DNA of 63,873 nucleotides, the filler included, from Polymyxa betae A26-41 (taxonomy: Eukaryota; Protista; Endomyxa: Phytomyxea): the NCBI GenBank assembly GCA_003693705.1. It is 5 parts of 5 records of this genome, joined end to end, with 100 filler letters (N's around TTAATTAATTAA, not from the genome) between each part and the next. Parts side by side here need not be neighbours in the genome. Positions count along the whole stretch, not along the records: positions 52,527 to 62,176 come from RBZT01000354.1; 4 more parts are not named here. The stretch is one strand, 5' to 3'. The position numbers and the translations under genes were made by a program. The notes beneath the pieces are model-generated. The model searched no databases, was not told the DNA's origin, and saw only the letters and a list, made by a program, of their open reading frames with translations. Below, one piece after another: positions 3,088 through 61,810 of this stretch; the stretch's first letter is position 1; each line of letters starts with the position of its first letter.

Positions 3088-5285
3088 CGTTAACAAAGAC
3101 AAATCGAAGCGCATCGAAAATTTGATAAGCAGTTTTCGGGATAACCTCATAAGAACTGCCAGAAAACCTTCATTAAGTTTGTACAGCTTAAAGGTCCCCA
3201 CTTTTGTTATAGAGAGGAAGGACTGTATGGTGTCGTACATTATGATAGATGGTTGTCTCAAATTCCAGATAGATAGGAAACGAGAGTCCATCAAAGTCAG
3301 ACCTTAATCTCTGACATTGATCGGAGTCGTTAAAACCCTAACACGACTGGTGCCCTGTGCCCAATGGCGGCAAAAACTGCTTGATGGGCCGACCCGTCCG
3401 ACCGGCCTTGGACAGGATCTGGGGGAATCCAATTCTACGTCATTATATATCAATTGCGCTCTTCGTACAAACTCTCGTTCTAATTTCCATCACCATGCAC
3501 GTTCATGTAGTCTTGATCGCCGCGGCCGTACTGGTCCTGGGGGCAACCGCCGCCTCGTCCGACCCGGAATCTGATCTCGTTCATCTCCCGGATCAGGAAT
3601 TTCACGTGGACAGCGGCCAGGTCGTACAGGCCCTGTTCGAATCGCCCAGTACCCGGATCCAGGAGATCCCCCAGTTGGTCCGTATTCTTGCTGACCGAGT
3701 CCAGTACGATTCCAAGACTCGCGATGATCTGAAGAATGTCTCTCCTCAGCTGGTCATGGGCGTGTATCAGTTTATAATGTGGGATGAGATATTGAGCAAT
3801 GAGCAGAAGGTTCAGCTACTGCGCTCTATGATCTTAGATCTGGGCCTGACCTTGATGAATGATGTGCACGAGTTCCTATTTTGTATCAGCAATGGTAATC
3901 CCTTACCCGGACTTCCTGTCCTTGGCATACCCGTTCCACAAGATCTTTCAGAACAAGTTCTTGATGTGATCGAGGAGAAAGTCGAAGAGAGCTTGCGTTG
4001 GCATCAACGAGGGCGCCAAGGCCAAATCCTCGCTCAAATGCGAGCAAGGAAACCGGTTCTTTTCAAAAATCCTGGTCACCATGATCTCGAGAACAAATTT
4101 TCGCCCATTCTATCCGTTCCCGTTCCGTTATGTGCTCAACGATAGATATGGTGTCGCCTCTCGTGTTCTGACCTCGTTTTTCAAAGAATCTCATCCTCTT
4201 GCTGAGTGGAAGAACTTACTGGCTCTGCGTCAGCTCGGGATCATGTTCAATCTCGATATCTATCTTCAATGTGTCCAGATTCCGCTCGAATCCATTCCGG
4301 ATATCGTTCCTCTGCTAAATCTCGGAAGTTTTCCGGACTTTTTGCAATTATTATCGGAGCTGGACATGGCCAGCAACACCAATACATATCAACAAACCCA
4401 TCATGTTGGACGAACTGCTCCGGACCAGGTTCTGCAATGGCTGCGGATCCCGTTTATTCAGCGACAAATCCTCACCAAGCCAGAAACGTTCATTGAATTC
4501 GCCGGCGACATGATGGTATCTGATAACACGGAGTTTTTCCGGGGTCTGGCCCAACTTCAGTTCATGCCCGAGATCATCTATGAATCCTGTTCATACAATG
4601 GCTTTCGTCAGACGGTGCTGAGGAAAGCCGTTTTCCATCAACGGTTCGATTTAGCGCAGATTCTGATGGGAATTCCGAATGCGTCTGTGTTCGTGAAGTT
4701 CGAGCGCACGAATTCCGTCTTCGATCTCATTCTTTGTGATACAATTGGCAGTTCTGAGAATGCGGCTAATGAGTTTTTAAAGTGCTCGGAATTACACAAA
4801 CTGATGCTCTCGAACATCCCAGAACTGAAACAATCTCTTAAATCTCTTATCGATGATCGAGATGTGAAACATATCCGTTCTCTGGTTCAACATCCTCTCT
4901 ATTGGAAGATCCCAGAAGATGTTAAACCTGAACTCATTCAATATTCAAATATTCATTGTCATGACATTTATGATATATTATGCTCTGCCAAAGAGCCAGC
5001 TCAAACAGTTTCACATTATAACTGAAACGTTTCAAGATTGTTTTCAATAAAATCCTTCATCTCAGCTTTGTGTATTGCTTTGTTTGATCTCCCTTTCTAG
5101 ACGACTGCTTCTCACAACTGTGCGCGTTTACAGGCTCGAAATTTTAAGTTATCGTTTGCTCAAAAATCAGATTCAAAACTCAATTGGCCTTTTCTGTCTC
5201 CCAATTGAGATTTCTATATTTACACTATATTTTCACATTTTCGCCGGCGCCACATTGTGGTTGATAGAGCTCTGTAACAACGTAG
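3088..5285 (+). repeat. Segmental duplication, copy 1 (copy 2 = ~7541-7903 plus 11904-13852)
   Basis: Continuous nucleotide similarity across upstream region, CDS and 3' flank. Copy 2 is split by the 4-kb insertion at 7904-11903. Confidence 0.9.
3495..5025 (+). CDS. Putative secreted effector-like protein, paralog with F-box deleted; one frameshift at ~4098-4101
   Basis: Signal peptide MHVHVVLIAAAVLVLGATAASS. ORFs 3357-4145 and 4081-5025 join if one T is removed from AAATTTTCGCCC, giving KFRPFYP as in the paralog. Confidence 0.65.
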
Positions 5286-52424: not shown

Positions 52425-52542
52425 TCNNNNNNNNNNNNNNNNNNNNNNNNNNNNNNNNNNNNNNNNNNNNTTAATTAATTAANNNNNNNNNNNNNNNNNN
52501 NNNNNNNNNNNNNNNNNNNNNNNNNNTCTCGAGACGAAACCG

Positions 52543-53976
52543 CTACAATCCCTTTTGATGATTCGCATAACCTAAGAATATTGATTTTCTTGCTCTAGGG
52601 TCAAGCTTTGTCCGGGAATGCTCTGGTATTAAGGCGTAAGCATCACATCCAAACACCCGAAGATAACGAATATCCGGTTTGCTTCCTTTCAGTAGTTCAT
52701 GTGGCGTGGAACCCTTATCGTTCGGATCGGGACATACATTGTAGATATGCGAGGCGGTGAGAATGGCCGGTCCCCAAAACTGTTTCGGTAAATTCGCATG
52801 TAGTAGCATTGAACGAGCTGAATCCATAAGAGTTAGGTGGCTTCTTTCCACGATTCCATTTTGCTCCGAACAAAACGGTACGGTAGACCTCCATTCAATT
52901 CCTGCTTTATCGAGATAGTCCTGGAACTCTCTGTTCACGAATTCTCCAGCATTGTCACCGAAAAGACATTTAATTGGTTTTCCTACTTGTTTCTCGAGTC
53001 TCCTTCTAAGAGATTTGAATCTTGATAATGCCTCGTTCTTTCGGTGTAAAAGGTATGTGAATTTGAACTTGCTTTTGCGTTCAGAAAAACTGATAAAGTA
53101 CCTTTCTCCGTTTATCGAAGCTACTGGTAATGGTCCGCATTCGTCGACATCAACACGCTCCAGCAAGTCCCAGTTCTTAATCTTAGAAACTCTTGGAAAT
53201 GGCGCCGCTTTAGCTTTACCGATGACGCAAGCTTCACAGAATCCAGGGTCTTGTGATGTGGTGTCGTCCAGTGACATATCCTTTGTAAGTTTTTTGTTTG
53301 CCATTCGAAGAATGTCTCTAACATTTCGATGTCCAAGACGGTGATGCCAAGTCATAAGCTTTAGCCTAGGCGTGGCGGCGGGTATAGGATTAACAAGAAA
53401 AGGATTTGTTGTACCCGGAGAGCTGTTTTCATTGACGATCAAAGCAGAATTGATGTGATTGTCCACATTTGCTTCTAAGCGATTTACGCCACACACACGA
53501 TTGTCGATCGTGAAGTCGTTCCAGTTGATGGATGGGTTGTTTCTTTTGAGCCACGGGATTCCCAGAATAACTGGGTAATGAGGAGAATCGATGACGTAAT
53601 ATTTCATCATTTCTGAGTTATTGCATATAGTTGATTTCAAAGGTATAGATATCTTTGTAACGGGTGCGAGGTTTCTTCCATCAATGGCTTCAACATTCAA
53701 AGGGCTTGAATTGACGGTTGGAATGCCTTCGTTCGTAACAATATTTCTGTCTATGAACTCTGAGAAGGAGCCGGAGTCTATCAGTGCTGTGAGATGCAAA
53801 GGATCTTCCCGACCTGGTATCTCTAATATGACTTGGGCGGTAAGGTGTGGTTGATGATTAGACGATAATGTTGAGATTAATTTGCAAGTTTTCGTGGTTT
53901 CATGTGTAACTTCTGCATTTGTTTGATGGAATTTCCAGGAGATTCTTGTGTGAACTCGGACGCGGAGACCGATTGT
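52543..53976 (-). CDS. pol: pol (partial): Gypsy-type aspartic protease followed by Copia-type integrase
   Basis: ALIDSGS..VILGIPWLKRNNPSINW, then WHHRLGH..CEACVIGK, VDVDECGP, GDNAGEF-x-NGIVER (D-35-E), LRVFGC..KLDPRARKSIFLGY. Frame is open from the gag TAA to 52543; ends next to a gap. Confidence 0.9.
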   Translation of the reverse strand, partial: TIGLRVRVHTRISWKFHQTNAEVTHETTKTCKLISTLSSNHQPHLTAQVILEIPGREDPLHLTALIDSGSFSEFIDRNIVTNEGIPTVNSSPLNVEAIDGRNLAPVTKISIPLKSTICNNSEMMKYYVIDSPHYPVILGIPWLKRNNPSINWNDFTIDNRVCGVNRLEANVDNHINSALIVNENSSPGTTNPFLVNPIPAATPRLKLMTWHHRLGHRNVRDILRMANKKLTKDMSLDDTTSQDPGFCEACVIGKAKAAPFPRVSKIKNWDLLERVDVDECGPLPVASINGERYFISFSERKSKFKFTYLLHRKNEALSRFKSLRRRLEKQVGKPIKCLFGDNAGEFVNREFQDYLDKAGIEWRSTVPFCSEQNGIVERSHLTLMDSARSMLLHANLPKQFWGPAILTASHIYNVCPDPNDKGSTPHELLKGSKPDIRYLRVFGCDAYALIPEHSRTKLDPRARKSIFLGYANHQKGL

Positions 53977-55062
53977 TTATTCATCACGTCTTTCGGCATT
54001 TCCCGACATTCTCGAAGCCAGTATATCACAGGAAACAGCGATGTGTCCTGGCTGTCCACAATACAGGCAAAGATGGTTCTCTCTGCGGCGCTTTCTTTCC
54101 TCATCGGTTAATGGCGCGCGTGGCTGAGATCCAGGTATGGTAGCATCGAGTATCATTGCGTCAGAATTGATTCCAATGTTTACCGTAGGCGATGGATTAG
54201 ATGATGCATGCATTCTGTAGGTGCTTCTGGTTATATTCAAAAGCTCGAGAAGCCGGTTATCAACTTCGATAGCGTCGTTAATTGCAATTTCCAGATTGGC
54301 GGGCTTAGGTTTATGTAAGAGCAACCTTTTTACGCCATTATTCAGGCCTTTTTGGAAATAATACGTTTTAGCTGAGTCATTCCAGTCAAGGTCGGATGCT
54401 GTTAGGCGAAATTCCGCAGCATAATCACTGGCAGATCGTCGACCTTGTCGCAGATTCTCAATTCTTCTTGATGCTGTTAATATTCTATCAGGATCACCGA
54501 AGGCACCCTCCAATAACTGAATGGTAGTCGACAGTTGCAGAAGACGGGGGTCTTCAGCTTCTAGGAATGGATTGAACCATTGTAGTGCTGGTCCTTTCAA
54601 GAGAGTTCCAAGCAGTGCGACCCGTATGCCATCCGTTGGATAGCGATTGGGCTGAAGCCGCCAGATCAATCGAAGTTGGTTGAGAAAACCTCTAAGCTTT
54701 CTCCTGTCTCCATCAAATTTTTCAGGTAGCGGAACGTTGGGCTCAGTTGATGACATATTTTGTTGAGGAGGCATGTGTTGTTGCTGCTGAATGTGCTGCT
54801 GTTGCTGTTGAGATTGCTGTTGGAGTAAAGCTAGTTGCTGTTGTTGATGTTGAAGTTGCTCATTTTGTTCGCAGATTGTCCGCTGTGCAAATTCAAGCTG
54901 CTGCTGCTGTTGAACATTAGTTTTGGCAGAATTTTGTTGATCATGTGTAGGAAAAACAAATTGTTGTAGCATTTGAACGTCGACCGTTTCCTGACGGCGG
55001 TTCGAAGGTGGCACAGATTCTGAACGTGATCGAGAGAGAGTGGGTTGATCAACTGGGCCCAT
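53977..55062 (-). CDS. gag: Gag, Ty3/Gypsy (sushi/PEG10-like) type with CCHC knuckle
   Basis: PEKFDGDRRKLRGFLNQL, LKGPALQWF, LRQGRRSASDYAAEF, FQKGL, LTDEERKRRRENHLCLYCGQPGHIAVSC. The ATG lies inside the PBS. Confidence 0.9.
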   Translation of the reverse strand: MGPVDQPTLSRSRSESVPPSNRRQETVDVQMLQQFVFPTHDQQNSAKTNVQQQQQLEFAQRTICEQNEQLQHQQQQLALLQQQSQQQQQHIQQQQHMPPQQNMSSTEPNVPLPEKFDGDRRKLRGFLNQLRLIWRLQPNRYPTDGIRVALLGTLLKGPALQWFNPFLEAEDPRLLQLSTTIQLLEGAFGDPDRILTASRRIENLRQGRRSASDYAAEFRLTASDLDWNDSAKTYYFQKGLNNGVKRLLLHKPKPANLEIAINDAIEVDNRLLELLNITRSTYRMHASSNPSPTVNIGINSDAMILDATIPGSQPRAPLTDEERKRRRENHLCLYCGQPGHIAVSCDILASRMSGNAERRDE

Positions 55063-55066
55063 AACC
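55053..55066 (-). promoter_or_regulatory. Primer-binding site for half initiator tRNA-Met (Copia/Hemivirus type)
   Basis: Minus strand reads GGTTATGGGCCCAG, the PBS known from Drosophila copia and complementary to the tRNAi-Met anticodon arm. Confidence 0.8.
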
Positions 55067-56610
55067 AAACGAAGTCTGAGAGAAACTAAGATACTAAATA
55101 AACAAATGTGTTCGAGGTTGACAGAAACTAAGGAAGTTGTTTTATTTGATGAAGTAGATGAAGTCAAGTTAGATGACAGAATCCACAGAGTGTGACTCAT
55201 ACATTAATTTAAAGTTCGCAAAATATCACATTAATAGGTCATTCTTCGAAGCGATGGGTGGTTTATTTGTGGTGCAGGTTTTCTCTCGAGAAGGCTCAAC
55301 TGTGTCAAAAGGTAGAGCTCGTCTCGGAGATGATTGCATCTCAGCGATTTACAAAACCGGCCACTTAGCTTCGATCGCCTCAGGGACCTTGCCCATCATC
55401 ATGTCTGTGTAGCATCCGGATAATTGTGTTAACGAACGTTTCCTGTTCTGTGGCTTGCTGAATGCGGGAACTTTTTCGACAGTGGGCCAGATGCCGATTT
55501 CTTCGCCAAACCAGATTGCTGTGGTCTGGATCCGATCGCGTCGAACAACAGCGATTAGTTGCAAGCTATTGCTTGCTCCGGAGTCGTTCCATACTGGCCG
55601 GCGTTTTCAGGCAACAAGTGGTACCGGTACTCGGCTGTATGTTGGTCTAGTACAACCGCTCCAAATAGACATCAAGCATCGGCTTGAAATTGTCCGTGTC
55701 CTCTTCAAGCAACGACAATGCGAATTAGAGTCGCTCTGATAGCGATAGCTTGATGATGTTTGTCATGCTTTTGACTAAGCCTTTTCCACAGGTCGCGTTT
55801 TGTCGACAGCGGCATTACTGTAGCTTCTGGCTGGGGCCTAACAATAATCCTTTGTCAGCACTCGCCATGTTCTCTTGAACATCTCGATTTTTTTGGGTTC
55901 TTGCAGATTGCGCTCTAATCCTCGACTTACAATTGGCGCAAACGCTGCCATCGTTCAAGCTCTGTTGAACTCGACTCCAGATACGTATGCGAACCAGTTT
56001 TTAAACAAACATTCCATTGCGTGGCAACCTGGAGAATAAACCGTCTACTTAAGTTGCCAGAATCCTCAACTTGTGGTAAACTGCGATTCCCCTTCGCCCA
56101 GATTTCCTTCTTTTGCTCTGCCGATTTCGTCATTTCACCCAACAAGGAGACTTCCAAAAATCTCGCAAATGCGAGTTACGCAAATCAGTCGCAAATCTCC
56201 TGCGCGGCCTTTCGCAAACCCGACATAAATTTGACAATACCGTAGTGGCAGGCTACCAAAAATCGCGCAAACGCAATTTCTATCATGACACAAATGTGAC
56301 ATAAATGCGAACACAAAAGTGACGTTAGTTTTGGGGGTCGAGGTACCGTAGACGACCGAGTAATCCGACCAATGTTTTGCCAATACGGGACACGTAAATA
56401 CTTTTGTCGTTTCCAAAAAAAAAAAACGGAATTTGGTCCAGCTCTGATACGAAGGCATTGACATACCTTGGTTACCTACCATGTTCGGACGTTTTTGCAG
56501 AAATTCCCGCATTTTCGAAAATTCGGATTCGCATTTTTGTCCCAAGAGGAACCGGAAATACGGTCAGTTTTGTCGCTGACCCTCAAGAATCCACATCTTG
56601 TGGGAAACTG

Positions 56611-56719
56611 TACTGATAGATATTATGCCCAGATGCCTGAGTACTATCAGCCTTGCGTTTCGGATAGAGCGCCGCCTGTTGACCAAAATCAACGAACTAG
56701 AATAATCCAATCCAATCCA
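56611..56719 (+). mobile_element. 109-bp 5'-truncated LINE 3' end with 13-bp TSD
   Basis: Matches the LINE 3' UTR and ends (AATCC)3. Flanked by TTGTGGGAAACTG at 56598-56610 and 56720-56732. Related empty site at ~56060-56090. Confidence 0.85.
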
Positions 56720-56913
56720 TTGTGGGAAACTGCGATTCCCTTCGCTCAGATTTCCTTCTTTTGCTCTGCCGATCTCGTCATTACGCCGAACACGACCCAT
56801 CAATCAACACAGCGGGTAAAACCCCAGCTGGCCAAGCTTAAAGGAACCCCGAAAGCCAGGAATTGTATATCGATGGCTTCTTCGCAGTTAAAGTTCAATC
56901 TTAAAGGGAACTC

Positions 56914-59900
56914 ATTAGATTGGATTGGATTGGATTTGACTAGTTCGTTGATTTTCATCAAGTATCAACAGGCGGTGCTATCTCCTCAGCACGTGGCCAA
57001 TAGGACACAAATGGTCACTATAGGAGCTCCTACTATCCATTTTCGGAGCGGACATTGTTTCACCCGGTTTGTATAAGATTCATCATAGTTCGGCCCTCTA
57101 TGTCCGGACCTAAGAATGCCTCAGTGAAGTATGATAGGCACCCGCCTAATCCAAGAGGGACTCGAACCCATGTACCCTACTCCCCCTAATACACCCCTAC
57201 TGGTTACCCAGCTCTCCCTCTTTGTCGTTATATATAGCATCCGTGTTTATGGCCTGCGTTGAGAAACTTTCTCATGAACTTTTCTTGAATGTAAAGTGCG
57301 TCGTTAAAATCAGTGATTTTTCGTCTTTTGTATTCTCGCCGGAATTTCTTTAGTTGTGTTTTGAGCTTTTTGCATTTGACCAAATTGGTGCTCTATCGTT
57401 TCGGGATATTTATTACAATGCCTACATGTGTTATCTTCTTCTATGCCAATGTTATTAAGATGTACTCTAGCTCGGGTATGGCCTGTTCGTGTCCGATTTA
57501 ATAGCGCATGTTCTCTGTGAACCCACATCTATGTCGGATTCTCACATATCCATCACGTAATCGTAATGGGAGTCTGTTGGGATAGTTTGTGAACTGACTT
57601 CTTTTGACGTTGTTCTCAACGAAATTCTTACGAATTCGGTTCTCAGCTTTTCTTAGTTTCAGCCTGTACGATGAGATGACTGTGTCGTGCACTTTTAGCT
57701 AATAGATCAATTGCATCACTTTCAGGGATTTTATCCGTATGACTGGGTATGACATGTAGATCGACTTGGTTTCTCACTGCAGGATCTCCTAGACTTTCTG
57801 CTACATCGATTAATATTGAGTTAACGAATCTGTATTTGTACGGTAACGTGGCAAGCTGCTGTAGACAAGAAAGAGAATCAGTAAATATGTGTATATGGCG
57901 ATCTTGTGGGTTAAACGATCTGATTGTGTCTAAACCAGCTTGAAGAGCGATGATTTCTGCATCATAGCTGGATGTTATATGACGTAACTGTAGTGGTGTG
58001 TGAATTCCTAATTGGAAGATTGTACTGTGTCGATAGGGATCTGATATATGAACAATGGCTGCTGCGCCACTGGTTGGTTCTAGCACTGGTTCTTTCGGTT
58101 CTCTATTCCAGGAACCGTCCGTCCAAATTGCAATATCTGGGTATTGTAAGATTAATTCTTCTTTTTTAAGTTTCTCCATGGCCGTTTTTTATCGCTCATG
58201 TGGAATTTACATCCTGTTAACCTATCAAGCGACTTTGAAGGTATTATATCTTGGGAATGGATGCGTGAGCCATATCTCTTCACTCTTTTTTCTAAGCCCT
58301 GTCTGACTTTTTCGAAAGGGGTCCATTCGTCTATTTGACATCCTGCTTTGTCATATTTCGAGTAATCATCTCCCAGTAGATTTCCCTGTGCAGCAGCTTT
58401 TAATACGGTCAATGTAGAGTCGGTGATGATTTTATCTTCTAGCAAAGGGAATTTCGAGATTGCATAAAGTAAGGGGACTGGGGTGGATTTTAGACATCCA
58501 GTGTATGTTCTCATATATTCGTTGTATGCAATTTCTAAAGGGCGCAGGGTGCCTTTAATATGCATTTCTCCTTCCTTCCAGGGTAGGTAATAGTTGAAGA
58601 TATCTCCAATGAAGGCCGTACAAGCTTGTTTGAATACTTTTCTGGGAATTTTGTACTTTTAGATTTGCTTGATAATCTTACAGCTTTTGATGATTTCTTT
58701 CGCGATCTTGCTCGTTTGAATGAGAAATGATGAGCTCTTATTTTCATTGTTGGCTGTTAGTTGGGCTTCTAGGTAGCGTATCGACTCAGCTGTCTGTATG
58801 GTCATTTTATCTGTTACAATGCAGTCATCTGGGTCATGTTCATTGAATAATACGAAGGTTTTGTCGGAGTGGAATTTAATCTTATTCTTCTCGCACCAGG
58901 TGATCATTCTTTCAAGTTGATGCTTTAGGCGTTTTTCTACGATGTTCCTATCTCGGCCCATTGCCCATCCTACTGTATCATCCACATACGTGTTCGCGAG
59001 TTTCGGTTTTAATGGGAGGTCGTATACAAATAATATCCATAAAGTACACTGAGACTGGATCCTTGTGGGATTCCATTTTCTTGTTTTCGTGGTAGAGACT
59101 CACATTGTCTGTATGATACTGTTAATTGACGATCAGTAAGCCAGTCATATATGATGTTTATCAGATAGGCAGGCGTGTTTAATTCAATCATCTTTTTTAC
59201 CAAGATGTGTTTAGGGACTCTATCATAGGCTTTAGTGAAGTCATATAGAATAGCTCCAAACTGCTGATCTGTGCCAGCAGCAATCCCGAATAATGCATAA
59301 GACGCATTAATGCCTGTGTAGTAGAGTGTCCTGGCCAGCAGCCAAATTGAAATCGACGGAGTTTCGCTTCTATTATTTCTCTCATTCGGATCTGTATCAT
59401 ATATTTTATTAATTTAGATAAGCTTGGTAATAGGCAGTTAGGTCTGTAATCTCGGCTTCGGAAGTGGTATTATTCTAGCTTCTTTTAGTTCCAGATGGTA
59501 TTTTCCTATCTCGATAATTTGCTTATTAATTGCTTGTAGAAGCACTCTTGCGAAGTCTGGTATCTCGTATGCAATTTTGATAAGCCGATTAGACACTCCG
59601 TCGCGCCCTTTCGCAGATCTCATATTTGCTCTTCTGATGGCCTGTTCCAACTCTCTGATTGTGAAGAGCGGGTTTTCTTCGTCTCGCATTCTGTCTCTGA
59701 TATCTCTGAGCTCGTTCCTCAGTTTGCGACGCTCTGTTTCTGTGGGTTTCACATTTGCTTGCCCAAATATGCTCTCGGATTGTTCTGCAATCTTTTCAGT
59801 CTCTTCATCGGCTTCGAGCGTATGGATGTTTTGTTGTCGCATCTTTTTATTAAGGTTTGGTTCTAGTTGTTTAATGAGTTTATAAAATTCTGCACCAGTG

Positions 59901-61810
59901 GGATCTGTGCATGCTTTTTAATTCGCTTGATGTTGTGTTTGCTCTTGGTCTTTCGAAACAGCTTTCTGAAGTCTCTCTGAGCCTGTTTGTACTTTAAATA
60001 TGCTTGTTCTGTGTCTTCAATTCGTATCCGGGCTTTTGCTATATCCTGTCTGCATTTATTTTGCAGTCTGACTGCAAAATAAATTGGTGTCCAGAATTTT
60101 ATTGGTACTGAAGAGATCTTTTCATAGGCCATGGCTTCTCTAAGTAACTTATTTATAGTTTCTCGTGTTAATTCTTCCTCTTCTTCCTCTATTTTCTTTA
60201 TTGCTTCTTGGATGTTTTTCCTCGTTTTCGGGAGGTCGGGAACTGTGTATTCAATATTCTGCCGCTCAAGCTCTGTTCTGTCGTGATATGAAGTTTCTTT
60301 GAGTGTCATTTCTGTTTTTGTCGGATTGTGGTCACTGCTCAGCTTATGGAGGACCTTCGTCTTTATTTGACTTTCGACGGCGAAGTTATTTGCTAGTGTA
60401 ATATCTAATGTGTTTTCTCCTCTGGTCGGTGTGTATTTGTCGCTAATTATATCCAAGGTTAATAGGATTTCGTCTAAATAATCATGGTTCTCTTGGTGTT
60501 TGATTCCAAAGCGCTGATCGCCCAGTGACGATTACTTTCAGCGTGGGGTTCTCGCTGTTGCATTCAACTATATAATCAGCTCAATCTTTCCACTATTTCT
60601 TTCTGTTTGTCATGCTGCGTTCTGGCCCAATGTATGGGTGTATCAATAATAATTCGTTATTAATCATGATGCATTGCGTGAGGGTTCATTCATGTTTGTT
60701 ATTCAGGGTCGTCGTCAGTTTCTGTACTTGTAATCCTCGTCTCCAAAATATGGCGCTTTGTCTATATTTGTCATTTTTTATGTAGTTCGGGAAATCTTTG
60801 ATTTGTCGTTGTGATCCCAGTTCTGAGATGCAGATTATATCTATCTTCTCTTTAAAGATAACTACTTCCAATTGTGCCAGTTTTTCTGAATTTAGTATGC
60901 ATGCATTCCATTGGAGGGATTTTTACGTAAATGATAACTGTATCTGTCTTCTGAATCATCTTCTACTATTCTCATTTCTAGATTGGTTGGGTCGTGACTG
61001 GTTTCCTGCCGTCTGTCAGGATTTTTATGGTTTGTTGTTATGCTGAGTGAGTTAAAGAAGTCTGTGATGTTAGTTTGCCGAGGGAATCCGTTGCCGGGCG
61101 GGGGGAGGTAGGGATTCTATAAATGCTGTCTCGAGCCTGTTCGTATCTAGGGTTATGCTATTGTTTTTGATACATTCTATCATATGTGGTCCTACAGGGT
61201 GGAGTAAGTATGGTTTTTTTGTTTATGACTGGGGTGGTTGAGGATGTGATTATTTCAGTGCAAGTCTGTGCTTTTGTATGAGAACGAGCGGTATGGAAAC
61301 TCCTGGGAAGATGTGATGTAGTATATGTTAGGGTTGTTTTGTTCTCAGCATATTCCTGTGTTATTCTATGTAGTATTGTTGTATTATGTTGCCCAGCCTG
61401 TGAAAGGAGAAATTCGTTTGGTATTTGTTCGTATAGTATAGTTCGTACGGGAGTAACCCGCAAAAGGTCGTACCCCGGAGCAATACCGCAGATGATGACG
61501 TATTGTCCTAATGGGTATAGAAGCGGGACATCAAGATCCAGTCCGCCCCAGCCACCAACAGCATGAAGGTCCGAGCGTGGGCAAAGCCCATAACTCGGTT
61601 CCATCCAACGTCATGGCGGGGTCTCTCTCGGCCCGCTCGGTTGGTGAGTTGGGGCTGGTAGAGAGAGGTCGCTTCTTGGGCTCAGGATTAAGGTCCTGGC
61701 CCATCGGGCCAGCTCCGCCTCGGCTTGCCTGCTGTCTCCAAGGGACGCTGTCCTTCGACGACGACCTCACACAACCCTACCTCGCAAACGCCACGCAGTT
61801 TTCGGAGTGA
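56914..61810 (-). mobile_element. Near full-length degenerate non-LTR retrotransposon (APE-RT-RNase H-CCHC)
   Basis: APE (IDIICISELG; NTLDITL..SSDHNP), RT (QFGC; GIPQGSSLS; YVDD), RNase H (IWTDGS, AEIIAL, IFTDSLS, PSH), CRHC..ETIEH, (AATCC)n tail at 56914-56937. Many frameshifts; 5' end approximate. Confidence 0.9.

What the first reader, a model, noticed from the sequence alone, without database searches (positions are those of the whole stretch)
52543..55066. Copia-Gypsy chimeric LTR retrotransposon: Copia PBS and integrase around a Gypsy Gag-protease
Seen on one contig and in one reading frame: PBS GGTTATGGGCCCAG; Gag with PEKFDG/GPALQW/LRQG/ERKRRRENHLCLYCG motifs; protease ALIDSG...LGIPWL..NPSINW; then directly WHHRLGH-CEAC, D-D35-E and the LRVFGC..KLD..FLGY (GKGY-region) integrase. 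Known: this Gag and protease are Ty3/Gypsy (sushi/PEG10/fungal chromovirus) type, where RT follows PR. The half-tRNAi-Met PBS, PR-IN order and these IN motifs are Ty1/Copia. Copia features on both sides of the Gypsy block argue against a simple mis-join. Inference: a Copia lineage that replaced its capsid and protease by inter-superfamily recombination, which I do not know to be described. RT and the 3' LTR are lost in the gap.
Basis: partly seen in the sequence, partly recalled or inferred. Interest (0 to 1): 0.88.

Follow-up and report, generated by a model that had tools for sequence, protein, structure and literature searches.

The report
Copia retrotransposon with Gypsy capsid and protease
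This is a decayed copy of a real, recurring lineage of LTR retrotransposons whose priming site, integrase and reverse transcriptase are Ty1/Copia-type but whose capsid (Gag) and protease come from Ty3/Gypsy chromoviruses, which shows that whole structural modules can be swapped between two retroelement families usually treated as separate.

Summary
On the minus strand, 55066 to 52543, lie a half-tRNAiMet primer-binding site, a Gag that matches Ty3/PEG10-type capsid families, a Ty3-type aspartic protease, and then, in the same open frame, a Copia-type integrase.

It is not a mis-join or a one-off nested insertion. I found the same protease-integrase fusion in at least ten other sequences, at 33-72% amino-acid identity. 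They come from six or more datasets, including the Plasmodiophora brassicae genome. Several have intact polymerase ORFs of 1063-1125 aa that continue into a Copia RT (Pfam RVT_2).

In trees, the integrases of these elements form one clade, and so do their RTs. Both clades sit next to canonical Copia elements that carry Copia-type Gag and protease. Their Gag and protease group instead with canonical chromoviruses (Gag 45-48% identical). The -1 gag/pol overlap motif is also shared with a chromovirus.

The best reading is that a Copia (Hemivirus-like) element replaced its gag-protease block with one from a chromovirus, and the product then diversified.

The window copy is cut off by the contig edge and carries in-frame stops. 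I found no published description. I rate it a new variant of a known kind.

The parts
55067..55199 (-). Putative 5' LTR, about 133 nt, starting TGAGTCAC. The boundaries are inferred, because the window holds no 3' LTR to pair it with.
   Evidence: In L004 the sequence right after the polypurine tract GAGGAGGGGAG starts TGAGTCAAC and runs about 150 nt to the primer-binding site. In L015 it starts TGATTCAC, about 110 nt before the site. The window aligns to the L004 start. Low to moderate confidence.
55053..55066 (-). Primer-binding site GGTTATGGGCCCAG, complementary to the anticodon stem-loop of initiator tRNA-Met (half-tRNA priming, Hemivirus type). The Gag ATG (55062-55060) lies inside it.
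   Evidence: Unique in the window; 0.01 hits expected by chance. Identical 14-mer at the same position in L004, also with the Gag ATG inside. Variants in L010 (GGTTATGAGCCC) and L015 (GGTTATCGGCCCAG). Half-tRNA priming is a feature of copia, 1731, Ty5 and Osser (PMC1181622, PMC5371799). The match to the tRNA sequence itself rests on my own knowledge.
53980..55062 (-). Gag ORF, 361 aa: a Q-rich N-terminal region, a Ty3/PEG10-type capsid domain (about 54265-54720) and a CCHC zinc knuckle (54025-54069).
   Evidence: Pfam DUF4939, Ty3_capsid, Retrotrans_gag, zf-CCHC. Best solved-structure matches are PEG10 7lga (7.8e-11) and Ty3 Gag 6r22 (2e-4). All 109 homologues carry Ty3-type Gag Pfam domains.
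53977..53979 (-). In-frame TAA between Gag and the protease.
   Evidence: Relatives L004, L010 and L015 have pol in the -1 frame. In the window the -1 frame carries two stops after the conserved GK motif.
53521..53793 (-). Aspartic protease of Ty3/chromovirus type. Active-site D-S-G at 53778-53770; C-terminal ILGIPWL...NPSINW.
   Evidence: Pfam RVP_2 and Peptidase_A2B. tblastn hits to chromovirus Pol in L005-L008, E 1e-16 to 1e-19. Protease tree.
53362..53499 (-). Junction and linker between the chromovirus-type protease and the Copia-type integrase. It is variable in length and sequence among relatives.
   Evidence: Chromovirus similarity ends near aa 158-160 of the 477-aa ORF. Copia similarity starts near aa 200-209. 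Alignment A1.
53215..53358 (-). Integrase N-terminal HHCC zinc domain (WHHRLGH...CEAC).
   Evidence: Pfam gag_pre-integrs 2.5e-9. Conserved in all relatives.
52882..53133 (-). Integrase catalytic core (D278, D341, E377 of the 477-aa ORF).
   Evidence: Pfam rve. Best solved-structure match is Ty1 integrase 7z0h, 4.3e-19. Motif positions.
52549..52686 (-). Integrase C-terminal SH3-like domain (LRVFGC...FLGY), cut short.
   Evidence: Pfam SH3_retrovirus 3e-18, profile positions 2-47 of 73.
52543..52545 (-). TAG stop inside the integrase C-terminal domain. The sequence after HQKG no longer matches relatives, and the piece ends at 52527.

Best explanation
The window holds the 5' part of a member of a distinct, monophyletic lineage of LTR retrotransposons. 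The part present is the LTR, primer-binding site, gag, protease and most of the integrase.

The backbone of this lineage is Ty1/Copia: a short LTR, a half-tRNAiMet primer-binding site, a polypurine tract, the domain order PR-IN-RT-RH, a Copia integrase and an RVT_2 RT. Its gag-protease block, including the -1 gag/pol overlap, is of Ty3/Gypsy chromovirus type.

The most likely origin is an ancestral Copia element, related to Hemivirus-type half-tRNA primers, that replaced its own gag-protease. This needs two crossovers with a chromovirus living in the same host: one between the primer-binding site and the gag start, the other between the end of the protease and the integrase zinc domain. Template switching between co-packaged RNAs, or DNA recombination, could do this. 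That step is inferred.

The product works as an ordinary LTR retrotransposon. The chromoviral Gag forms the particle. The chromoviral protease cuts a polyprotein whose enzymes are Copia-type. A half tRNAiMet primes the Copia RT, and the Copia integrase inserts the cDNA.

The window copy itself is probably inactive. It has a stop between gag and pol with no usable -1 frame, a stop in the integrase, and it is cut by the contig end.
For: Shown:
- Domain assignments in the window.
- The same architecture in about 10 other sequences from 6 or more datasets at 33-72% identity, with the protease and integrase in one ORF. L010 has an intact 1063-aa Pol reading gag-asp_proteas/RVP_2, gag_pre-integrs, rve, SH3_retrovirus, RVT_2 (6.9e-53), next to a Ty3-type Gag.
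- Integrase tree: all 8 chimeric integrases, the window's included, form one clade (SH-aLRT 99). It lies inside a 100-supported clade with P0169, P0074, P0055 and P0060, all of which have Retrotran_gag_2 and Pol_BBD.
- RT tree: the chimeric RTs form one clade (99), sister to P0169 and then P0074 (99). Gypsy RTs lie 5 substitutions per site away.
- Gag: the nearest relatives outside the lineage (45-48% identity) lie in canonical chromoviruses with PR-RVT_1-RNaseH-H2C2-rve-Chromo. Chromovirus clades lie on both sides of the chimeric Gags in the tree.
- Protease: 34-47% identical to chromoviral proteases. None of about 140 canonical Copia polyproteins matched it at E<1e-3. The tree split has 100/100 support.
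- The -1 frame overlap with the 'GKRQ' motif is shared by L004, L015 and chromovirus L005.
- The primer-binding site is conserved across members, while chromovirus relatives carry a different motif (ACAGTTTGA) upstream of gag.
Against: - No copy with two LTRs and a target-site duplication was recovered, so transposition competence is inferred from intact ORFs and from circularly assembled contigs (L015, period 4466 bp).
- The Gag tree does not recover the chimeric Gags as one clade. L010 groups with P0247 and P0277, whose downstream genes are unknown. Holding the four chimeric Gags together gave p-AU 0.025. That test was post hoc and involved long branches.
- The protease tree has no resolution within the chromovirus + chimeric group.
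- Rooting Copia with Gypsy RT uses a very long branch.
- No named reference lineages (GyDB/REXdb) were available.
- The host of the window is unknown.
Confidence: 0.82

Rival explanations
1. Assembly chimera, or a unique nested-insertion relic: a Copia fragment joined to or inserted into a Gypsy element in this contig only.
For: The window is a short contig from an unknown source. TE-rich regions are prone to mis-joins. A degraded LINE lies next door. The copy carries stops.
Against: The protease and integrase lie in one uninterrupted ORF. The same junction recurs in about 10 independent, divergent sequences, including an NCBI genome assembly (L009), and in intact 1063-1125 aa Pol ORFs. The Copia-type primer-binding site upstream of the Gypsy-type gag is conserved as well.
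Confidence: 0.02
2. Ancestral intermediate. The lineage is a deep branch that kept a Ty3-like gag-protease from the common ancestor of Copia and Gypsy, and canonical Copia Gag and protease are the derived state.
For: All retroelement capsids and proteases are ultimately homologous. Root placement within Copia is uncertain because the Gypsy outgroup branch is very long.
Against: By both RT and integrase the lineage is nested: (P0074,(P0169,chimeric)) among 60 canonical Copia, and these sisters have canonical Copia Gag and protease. Gag is 45-48% identical to one particular chromovirus group. That is closer than vertebrate Gypsy-type Gags in the same search (32-35%) and comparable to its integrase identity to Copia relatives. 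Such closeness is not expected for a fast-evolving gene kept since the split of the two families.
Confidence: 0.06
3. Repeated exchange. The Copia backbone lineage acquired chromoviral gag-protease blocks more than once, or kept recombining with resident chromoviruses.
For: Group A Gags (window, L004, P0184) and the L010 Gag fall in separate clades. L010 joins P0247 (SH-aLRT 99). In L013, P0247 has the chromovirus-like ACAGTTTGATC motif upstream of gag rather than the half-tRNA site. Monophyly of the four chimeric Gags gave p-AU 0.025. Chromoviruses with related Gag co-occur in the same assembly as L001 and L002 (L014).
Against: The integrase tree gives a single clade whose two subgroups, A and B, match the protease subgroups, as expected from one capture followed by co-divergence. 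The branches of L010, P0247 and P0277 are long and were flagged as possible false joins. The pol downstream of P0247 is unknown.
Confidence: 0.15
4. A Gmr1-like Ty3/Gypsy element, that is, a Gypsy element whose own integrase moved upstream of RT.
For: Gmr1-like elements are Gypsy elements with the integrase upstream of RT (PMC3587641), which gives the same domain order and a Gypsy Gag and protease.
Against: The integrase carries the Copia-specific domains gag_pre-integrs and SH3_retrovirus, and its best solved-structure match is Ty1 integrase, not Ty3. RT in relatives is RVT_2 at 1e-53 to 1e-62 and clusters inside Copia. tblastn with the integrase finds nothing in chromovirus loci.
Confidence: 0.01

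Closest known systems
Ty1/Copia (Pseudoviridae), especially half-tRNA-primed Hemivirus-type elements (copia, 1731, Ty5, Osser)
   Same: Primer-binding site complementary to the tRNAiMet anticodon stem-loop. Domain order PR-IN-RT-RH. Integrase with the GAG-pre-integrase zinc domain and SH3_retrovirus/GKGY region. RVT_2 RT in relatives. Short LTRs and a compact unit of about 4.5 kb (L015).
   Different: Gag is not Retrotran_gag_2/UBN2/TYA type and the protease is not Pol_BBD type. Both are chromoviral. In relatives, gag and pol are expressed through a -1 frame overlap rather than the single ORF usual in Copia. That Copia usage is from my own knowledge.
Ty3/Gypsy chromoviruses (Metaviridae), such as the elements in L005, L006 and L014, and the sushi/PEG10-type Gag family
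   Same: Gag (Ty3_capsid, Retrotrans_gag, RTL1-8_LDOC, CCHC) at 45-48% identity. Protease (RVP_2/gag-asp_proteas, ILG.PWL...IDW) at 34-47% identity. The -1 gag/pol overlap motif.
   Different: No RVT_1 RT, no Integrase_H2C2, no SH3_Tf2-1, no chromodomain. The integrase precedes RT. The primer-binding site is different.
Gmr1-like Gypsy elements
   Same: A Gypsy-type Gag and protease followed by the integrase before RT.
   Different: In Gmr1 the integrase and RT are Gypsy-type (a rearrangement within one family). Here they are Copia-type (a mosaic between two families).

Membership tests
Ty1/Copia (Pseudoviridae) | Pol domain order PR-IN-RT-RH | tested here: met
   The window shows PR then IN. 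L010, L015, L004 and L002 show PR-IN-RVT_2, with an RNase H tail in L002 and L004.
Ty1/Copia (Pseudoviridae) | Copia-type RT (Pfam RVT_2; RT clusters with Copia) | tested here: inconclusive
   The window has no RT because the contig ends. Relatives have RVT_2 at 5.6e-62 (L004) and 6.9e-53 (L010), and fall inside Copia in the RT tree.
Ty1/Copia (Pseudoviridae) | Copia-type integrase (GAG-pre-integrase HHCC, rve, SH3_retrovirus) | tested here: met
   The best PDB match is Ty1 integrase 7z0h, 4.3e-19. The integrase tree places it inside Copia.
Ty1/Copia (Pseudoviridae) | Copia-type Gag (Retrotran_gag_2/3, UBN2, TYA) | tested here: not met
   No such Pfam hit at E<=1. Gag matches Ty3/PEG10-type families. 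The nearest canonical Copia elements (P0169, P0074, P0055, P0060) do have Retrotran_gag_2.
Ty1/Copia (Pseudoviridae) | Copia-type protease (Pol_BBD) | tested here: not met
   No Pol_BBD hit. The protease tree separates it from Copia proteases with 100/100 support.
Hemivirus-type priming | Primer-binding site complementary to the tRNAiMet anticodon stem-loop, next to the 5' LTR | tested here: met
   Exact 14-mer, unique in the window, conserved in L004, L010 and L015. Actual primer use cannot be tested here.
Ty3/Gypsy chromovirus (Metaviridae) | Ty3-type capsid Gag and retropepsin | tested here: met
Ty3/Gypsy chromovirus (Metaviridae) | Order PR-RT-RH-IN with an RVT_1 RT | tested here: not met
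   The integrase follows the protease directly in one ORF. Relatives have RVT_2, not RVT_1.
Ty3/Gypsy chromovirus (Metaviridae) | Integrase with H2C2 zinc domain, SH3_Tf2-1 and a chromodomain | tested here: not met
   None of these Pfam domains is in the window or in the L010 or L009 Pol. They are present in L005, L006 and L014.
Gmr1-like Gypsy | Gypsy-type RT and integrase with the integrase moved upstream of RT | tested here: not met
   The order fits, but the integrase and RT are Copia-type.
Functional LTR retrotransposon (this copy) | Paired LTRs, target-site duplication, open gag-pol | tested here: not met
   There is no 3' half (contig edge). An in-frame TAA lies at 53977-79 with stops in the -1 frame, and a TAG at 52543-45. 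No LTR pair in the window.

The most novel reading that the evidence does not exclude
A widespread, still-active lineage arose from recombination between Pseudoviridae and Metaviridae. It is found in Rhizaria (Plasmodiophora) and in unidentified soil and rhizosphere eukaryotes. In it, a chromoviral capsid and protease package and process a Copia replication machinery that is primed by a half tRNA. This would show that the structural and replicative modules of two Ortervirales families are functionally interchangeable. It might also merit its own genus-level group, possibly with repeated module exchange.
Probability: 0.55. Interest if true: 0.82.

Novelty: new variant of a known kind. Interest (0 to 1): 0.72.

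Why it matters
LTR retrotransposon classification, and the ICTV families Pseudoviridae and Metaviridae, assume that gag, protease, RT and integrase co-evolve as one unit. [quoted passage not shown]

A monophyletic lineage with a Copia backbone and a chromoviral gag-protease is a clear natural counter-example. It has three consequences:

- It gives a natural experiment on which capsid/protease-to-enzyme contacts are generic. These include packaging of an RNA with a Copia leader, annealing of a half-tRNA primer by a chromoviral nucleocapsid, and protease cleavage at Copia domain borders.
- It will be mis-annotated by domain-based TE classifiers, for example split into a 'Gypsy' and a 'Copia' fragment or called a nested insertion.
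- It adds a retroelement case to the known pattern of capsid-module swapping in virus evolution.

Tried and rejected
- LTR pairs: none in the window piece or around the L002 copy. L002 is 5'-truncated, so full-length structure had to be inferred from L004, L010 and L015.
- The search for related loci with the 8-sequence alignment A1 failed because it had no conserved stretch. A tighter integrase alignment, A2, gave only one new locus in the JGI metagenomes (L010) and none in viral contigs.
- tRNA and Rfam scans of the piece and of loci found nothing, so the host tRNAiMet could not be read directly.
- Cluster look-ups gave no organism names, so the host of the window stays unknown.
- Pfam on the neighbouring LINE ORFs gave only a weak RNase_H hit.
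- In the protease tree the L002 row was extracted from the wrong segment and sits on a 6.5 branch. It should be ignored.
- The AU test on Gag monophyly was defined after seeing the tree and excludes P0247 and P0277, whose architecture is unknown. I treat it as a hint only.
- Ten literature searches found no description of a Copia element with Gypsy gag-protease. That library does not cover subscription journals or Repbase.
Gag and Pol pieces were always searched separately.
Full report
**Observation**

The element lies on the minus strand of the piece. Reading from 55200 downwards, the order is as follows.

- A short non-coding stretch.
- The 14-mer GGTTATGGGCCCAG at 55066-55053. It is the only occurrence in the window with up to one mismatch; 0.01 are expected by chance.
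- A 361-aa Gag whose ATG (55062-55060) sits inside that 14-mer.
- An in-frame TAA at 53977-53979.
- A 477-aa open frame (53976-52546) holding a protease and, with no interruption, an integrase.
- A TAG at 52543-52545. The piece ends at 52527.

The integrase catalytic triad is D278, D341, E377, with 35 residues between the last two.

**Domain assignment in the window**

Pfam gives these assignments.

| Part | Pfam matches |
|---|---|
| Gag | DUF4939/RTL1-8_LDOC 1.7e-9, Ty3_capsid 2.5e-8, Retrotrans_gag 4.5e-8, zf-CCHC |
| Pol ORF, protease part | RVP_2 3.8e-4, Peptidase_A2B (Ty3 peptidase) 7e-4 |
| Pol ORF, integrase part | gag_pre-integrs 2.5e-9, rve, SH3_retrovirus 3e-18 |

No Copia-type Gag family (Retrotran_gag_2/3, UBN2) and no Copia protease family (Pol_BBD) is hit.

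Against solved structures, Gag matches PEG10 (7lga, 7.8e-11) and Ty3 Gag (6r22, 2e-4). The integrase matches Ty1 integrase best (7z0h, 4.3e-19).

**It is a lineage, not an accident**

Searching the protease-integrase ORF found proteins that span both the protease and the integrase: P0001, P0002, P0005, P0006 and P0050. Their contigs, and further loci found through Gag and through a longer Pol query, show the same arrangement.

| Locus | Source | What it shows |
|---|---|---|
| L004 | JGI 3300079107 | Ty3-type Gag, protease ORF, then a 759-aa ORF with gag_pre-integrs, SH3_retrovirus and RVT_2 (5.6e-62) |
| L010 | JGI Ga0207645_10017246 | Ty3-type Gag (Retrotrans_gag 1.1e-11) and an intact 1063-aa Pol: gag-asp_proteas/RVP_2, gag_pre-integrs, rve, SH3_retrovirus, RVT_2 (6.9e-53) |
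| L015 | JGI 3300066482 | 1086-aa Pol of the same kind, flanked by Ty3-type Gag |
| L002, L001 | ENA ERZ25039503 | gag(C-terminus)-PR-IN-RVT_2-RNase H, and PR-IN |
| L003 | JGI 3300005328 | PR-IN |
| L009 | Plasmodiophora brassicae GCA_001049375.1 | One ORF with a chromovirus-type protease, then WHHRLGH, the integrase, and RVT_2 downstream |

Identity to the window is 33-47% in the protease, 54% in Gag (L004) and 53-72% in the integrase. Mis-assembly or a unique nested insertion cannot produce the same in-frame junction in sequences this divergent.

**Where each module belongs**

*Integrase.* The eight chimeric integrases, including the window's, form one clade (SH-aLRT 99). It lies inside a 100-supported clade with P0169, P0074, P0055 and P0060.

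*RT.* The chimeric RTs form one clade (99), sister to P0169 and then P0074 (99), among 58 Copia RTs. Chromovirus RTs lie across a branch of 5 substitutions per site.

*The sister elements.* P0169, P0074, P0055 and P0060 all have the canonical Copia set: Retrotran_gag_2, Pol_BBD, gag_pre-integrs, rve, SH3_retrovirus, RVT_2.

*Gag.* All 109 homologues carry Ty3-type Gag domains. Every one whose context I fetched from outside the lineage lies in a canonical chromovirus with PR-RVT_1-RNaseH-Integrase_H2C2-rve-SH3_Tf2-1-Chromo:
- P0186 = L005, 48% identity
- P0202 = L006-8
- P0249 = L014

In the Gag tree, chromovirus clades lie on both sides of the chimeric Gags.

*Protease.*
- The window's protease hits chromovirus Pol in L005-L008 at E 1e-16 to 1e-19.
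- L010's protease is 47% identical to that of chromoviral Pols P0300 and P0301.
- None of about 140 canonical Copia polyproteins matched the protease at E<1e-3.
- A protease tree separates chimeric + chromoviral proteases from the proteases of the lineage's own RT-sisters, with 100/100 support.

**Cis elements and expression**

*Primer-binding site.* It is identical in L004, again with the Gag ATG inside it. L010 has GGTTATGAGCCC and L015 has GGTTATCGGCCCAG at the equivalent place. Priming from the anticodon stem-loop of tRNAiMet is the hallmark of Hemivirus-type Copia elements such as copia, 1731, Ty5 and Osser, whereas Metaviridae use the tRNA 3' end (PMC1181622, PMC5371799). The chromovirus relatives L005, L006 and L013 instead share ACAGTTTGA upstream of gag.

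*LTR.* In L004 and L015 the end of pol is followed within about 110-150 nt by the primer-binding site and gag. L015's ends overlap exactly, with a period of 4466 bp. This is a collapsed-LTR or circular assembly and implies very short LTRs and a unit of about 4.5 kb. After the polypurine tract the LTR starts TGAGTCAAC in L004 and TGATTCAC in L015. The window has TGAGTCAC at 55199, so I place a tentative 133-nt 5' LTR at 55199-55067.

*Gag/pol overlap.* Pol is in the -1 frame relative to gag in L004, L010 and L015. The overlap encodes a conserved GKRQ motif that chromovirus L005 also has. The recoding region therefore travelled with the gag-protease block.

*Breakpoints.* The upstream breakpoint lies between the primer-binding site and the gag start. 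The downstream breakpoint lies between the end of the protease (about 53499) and the integrase zinc domain (about 53362).

**State of the window copy**

- Gag and protease are in the same phase, separated by TAA.
- The -1 frame that relatives use has two stops just after the GK motif.
- The integrase ends at a TAG where relatives read on with HQKGY.
- The last 17 nt before the edge no longer resemble relatives.
- RT, RNase H and the 3' LTR are beyond the contig end.

It is most likely a decayed, possibly truncated insertion.

**Mechanism**

*Shown:* a monophyletic Copia-backbone lineage carries a chromoviral gag-protease.

*Inferred:*
- One ancestral double recombination with a co-resident chromovirus. 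This could be template switching in a mixed particle or DNA-level recombination. Related chromoviruses do co-occur in the same assembly as L001 and L002 (L014).
- The chimera replicates like any LTR retrotransposon, which requires the chromoviral nucleocapsid and protease to work with a Copia leader, primer and enzymes.

Whether capture happened once is not settled. The integrase and protease subgroups agree with each other: A is the window, L004 and L002; B is L010, L001, L015 and P0005. But L010's Gag groups with P0247 and P0277 rather than with group A. Holding the four chimeric Gags together gave p-AU 0.025. That test was post hoc, involved long branches, and the architecture of P0247 is unknown.

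**Comparison with what is known**

The element works like a Copia element and is placed in Copia by RT, integrase, domain order and primer-binding site. It fails the Copia Gag and protease criteria. It meets the chromovirus Gag and protease criteria, while failing all chromovirus Pol criteria.

It is not Gmr1-like. Gmr1 is a Gypsy element with its own integrase moved upstream of RT (PMC3587641).

Reviews of LTR-element evolution discuss modular and reticulate evolution in general terms (PMC2774666). [quoted passage not shown] In ten full-text searches I found no description of a Copia lineage with Gypsy gag-protease. Repbase and subscription journals were not searchable, so the claim of novelty is provisional.

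**Limits**

- No named reference lineages were available.
- Copia rooting relies on a long outgroup branch.
- No paired-LTR copy was recovered.
- The host is unknown. GC is about 43%. The relatives are mostly from JGI, ENA and Logan metagenome assemblies, plus P. brassicae.
- The complementarity of the primer-binding site to tRNAiMet rests on established knowledge, not on a tRNA read here.
- The contig is not human.

Noticed in passing
window 57310-60871 (-): A degraded non-LTR (LINE-like) retrotransposon. It appears as a string of broken minus-strand ORFs, with a start that looks like an endonuclease (by eye, untested), RT-like pieces, an RNase H domain (Pfam 6.7e-5, 57646-58179) and a C-terminal CxxC...H knuckle remnant.
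   Followed up: partly
window 56090-56144 and 56738-56792; inverted arms 56638-56719 / 56921-57009: A 55-nt direct repeat (91% identical, 648 nt apart) and a nested pair of inverted repeats (41 nt at 88%, 45 nt at 71%) lie between the LTR element and the LINE. This may be a small foldback or MITE-like element.
   Followed up: no
window about 54760-54945 (-), Gag aa about 40-100: A glutamine-rich, low-complexity N-terminal region of Gag lies ahead of the capsid domain. L004 also has a Q-rich start. Its function was not examined.
   Followed up: no
L015 6-131 = 4472-4597: The ends of the contig overlap perfectly (126 nt, period 4466 bp). The element was therefore assembled as a circle or tandem (pol-LTR-PBS-gag). 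This fits collapsed short LTRs, a tandem array or a one-LTR circle.
   Followed up: partly
L004 1-354: The contig begins with the C-terminal RNase H end of a Copia Pol, followed by a polypurine tract (GAGGAGGGGAG), about 150 nt, the primer-binding site and gag. This is the same pol-LTR-gag permutation as in L015.
   Followed up: partly
L010 299-488: Four tandem copies of a 33-nt unit lie upstream of the primer-binding site, probably inside the LTR U3 region. The ATG inside L010's primer-binding site opens only a short upstream ORF, and Gag starts 50 nt further on.
   Followed up: no
L014 1087-3265 (-) and 4887-9579 (+): In the same ENA assembly as L001 and L002, a canonical chromovirus with related Gag lies 1.6 kb from a broken Copia-type fragment (SH3_retrovirus, RVT_2). 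Both putative parental kinds therefore co-reside in one genome.
   Followed up: partly
L015 about 583-591 (Pol aa 10-12): The protease active-site triplet reads D-N-G (ALIDNGASS) rather than D-S/T-G in this otherwise intact 1086-aa Pol. L001 has D-G-A. Whether these proteases are active is unknown.
   Followed up: no
L005, L006, L013 upstream of gag: Chromovirus relatives share the motif ACAGTTTGA(T/A)C just upstream of gag. It may be the LTR end plus a primer-binding or self-priming site.
   Followed up: no
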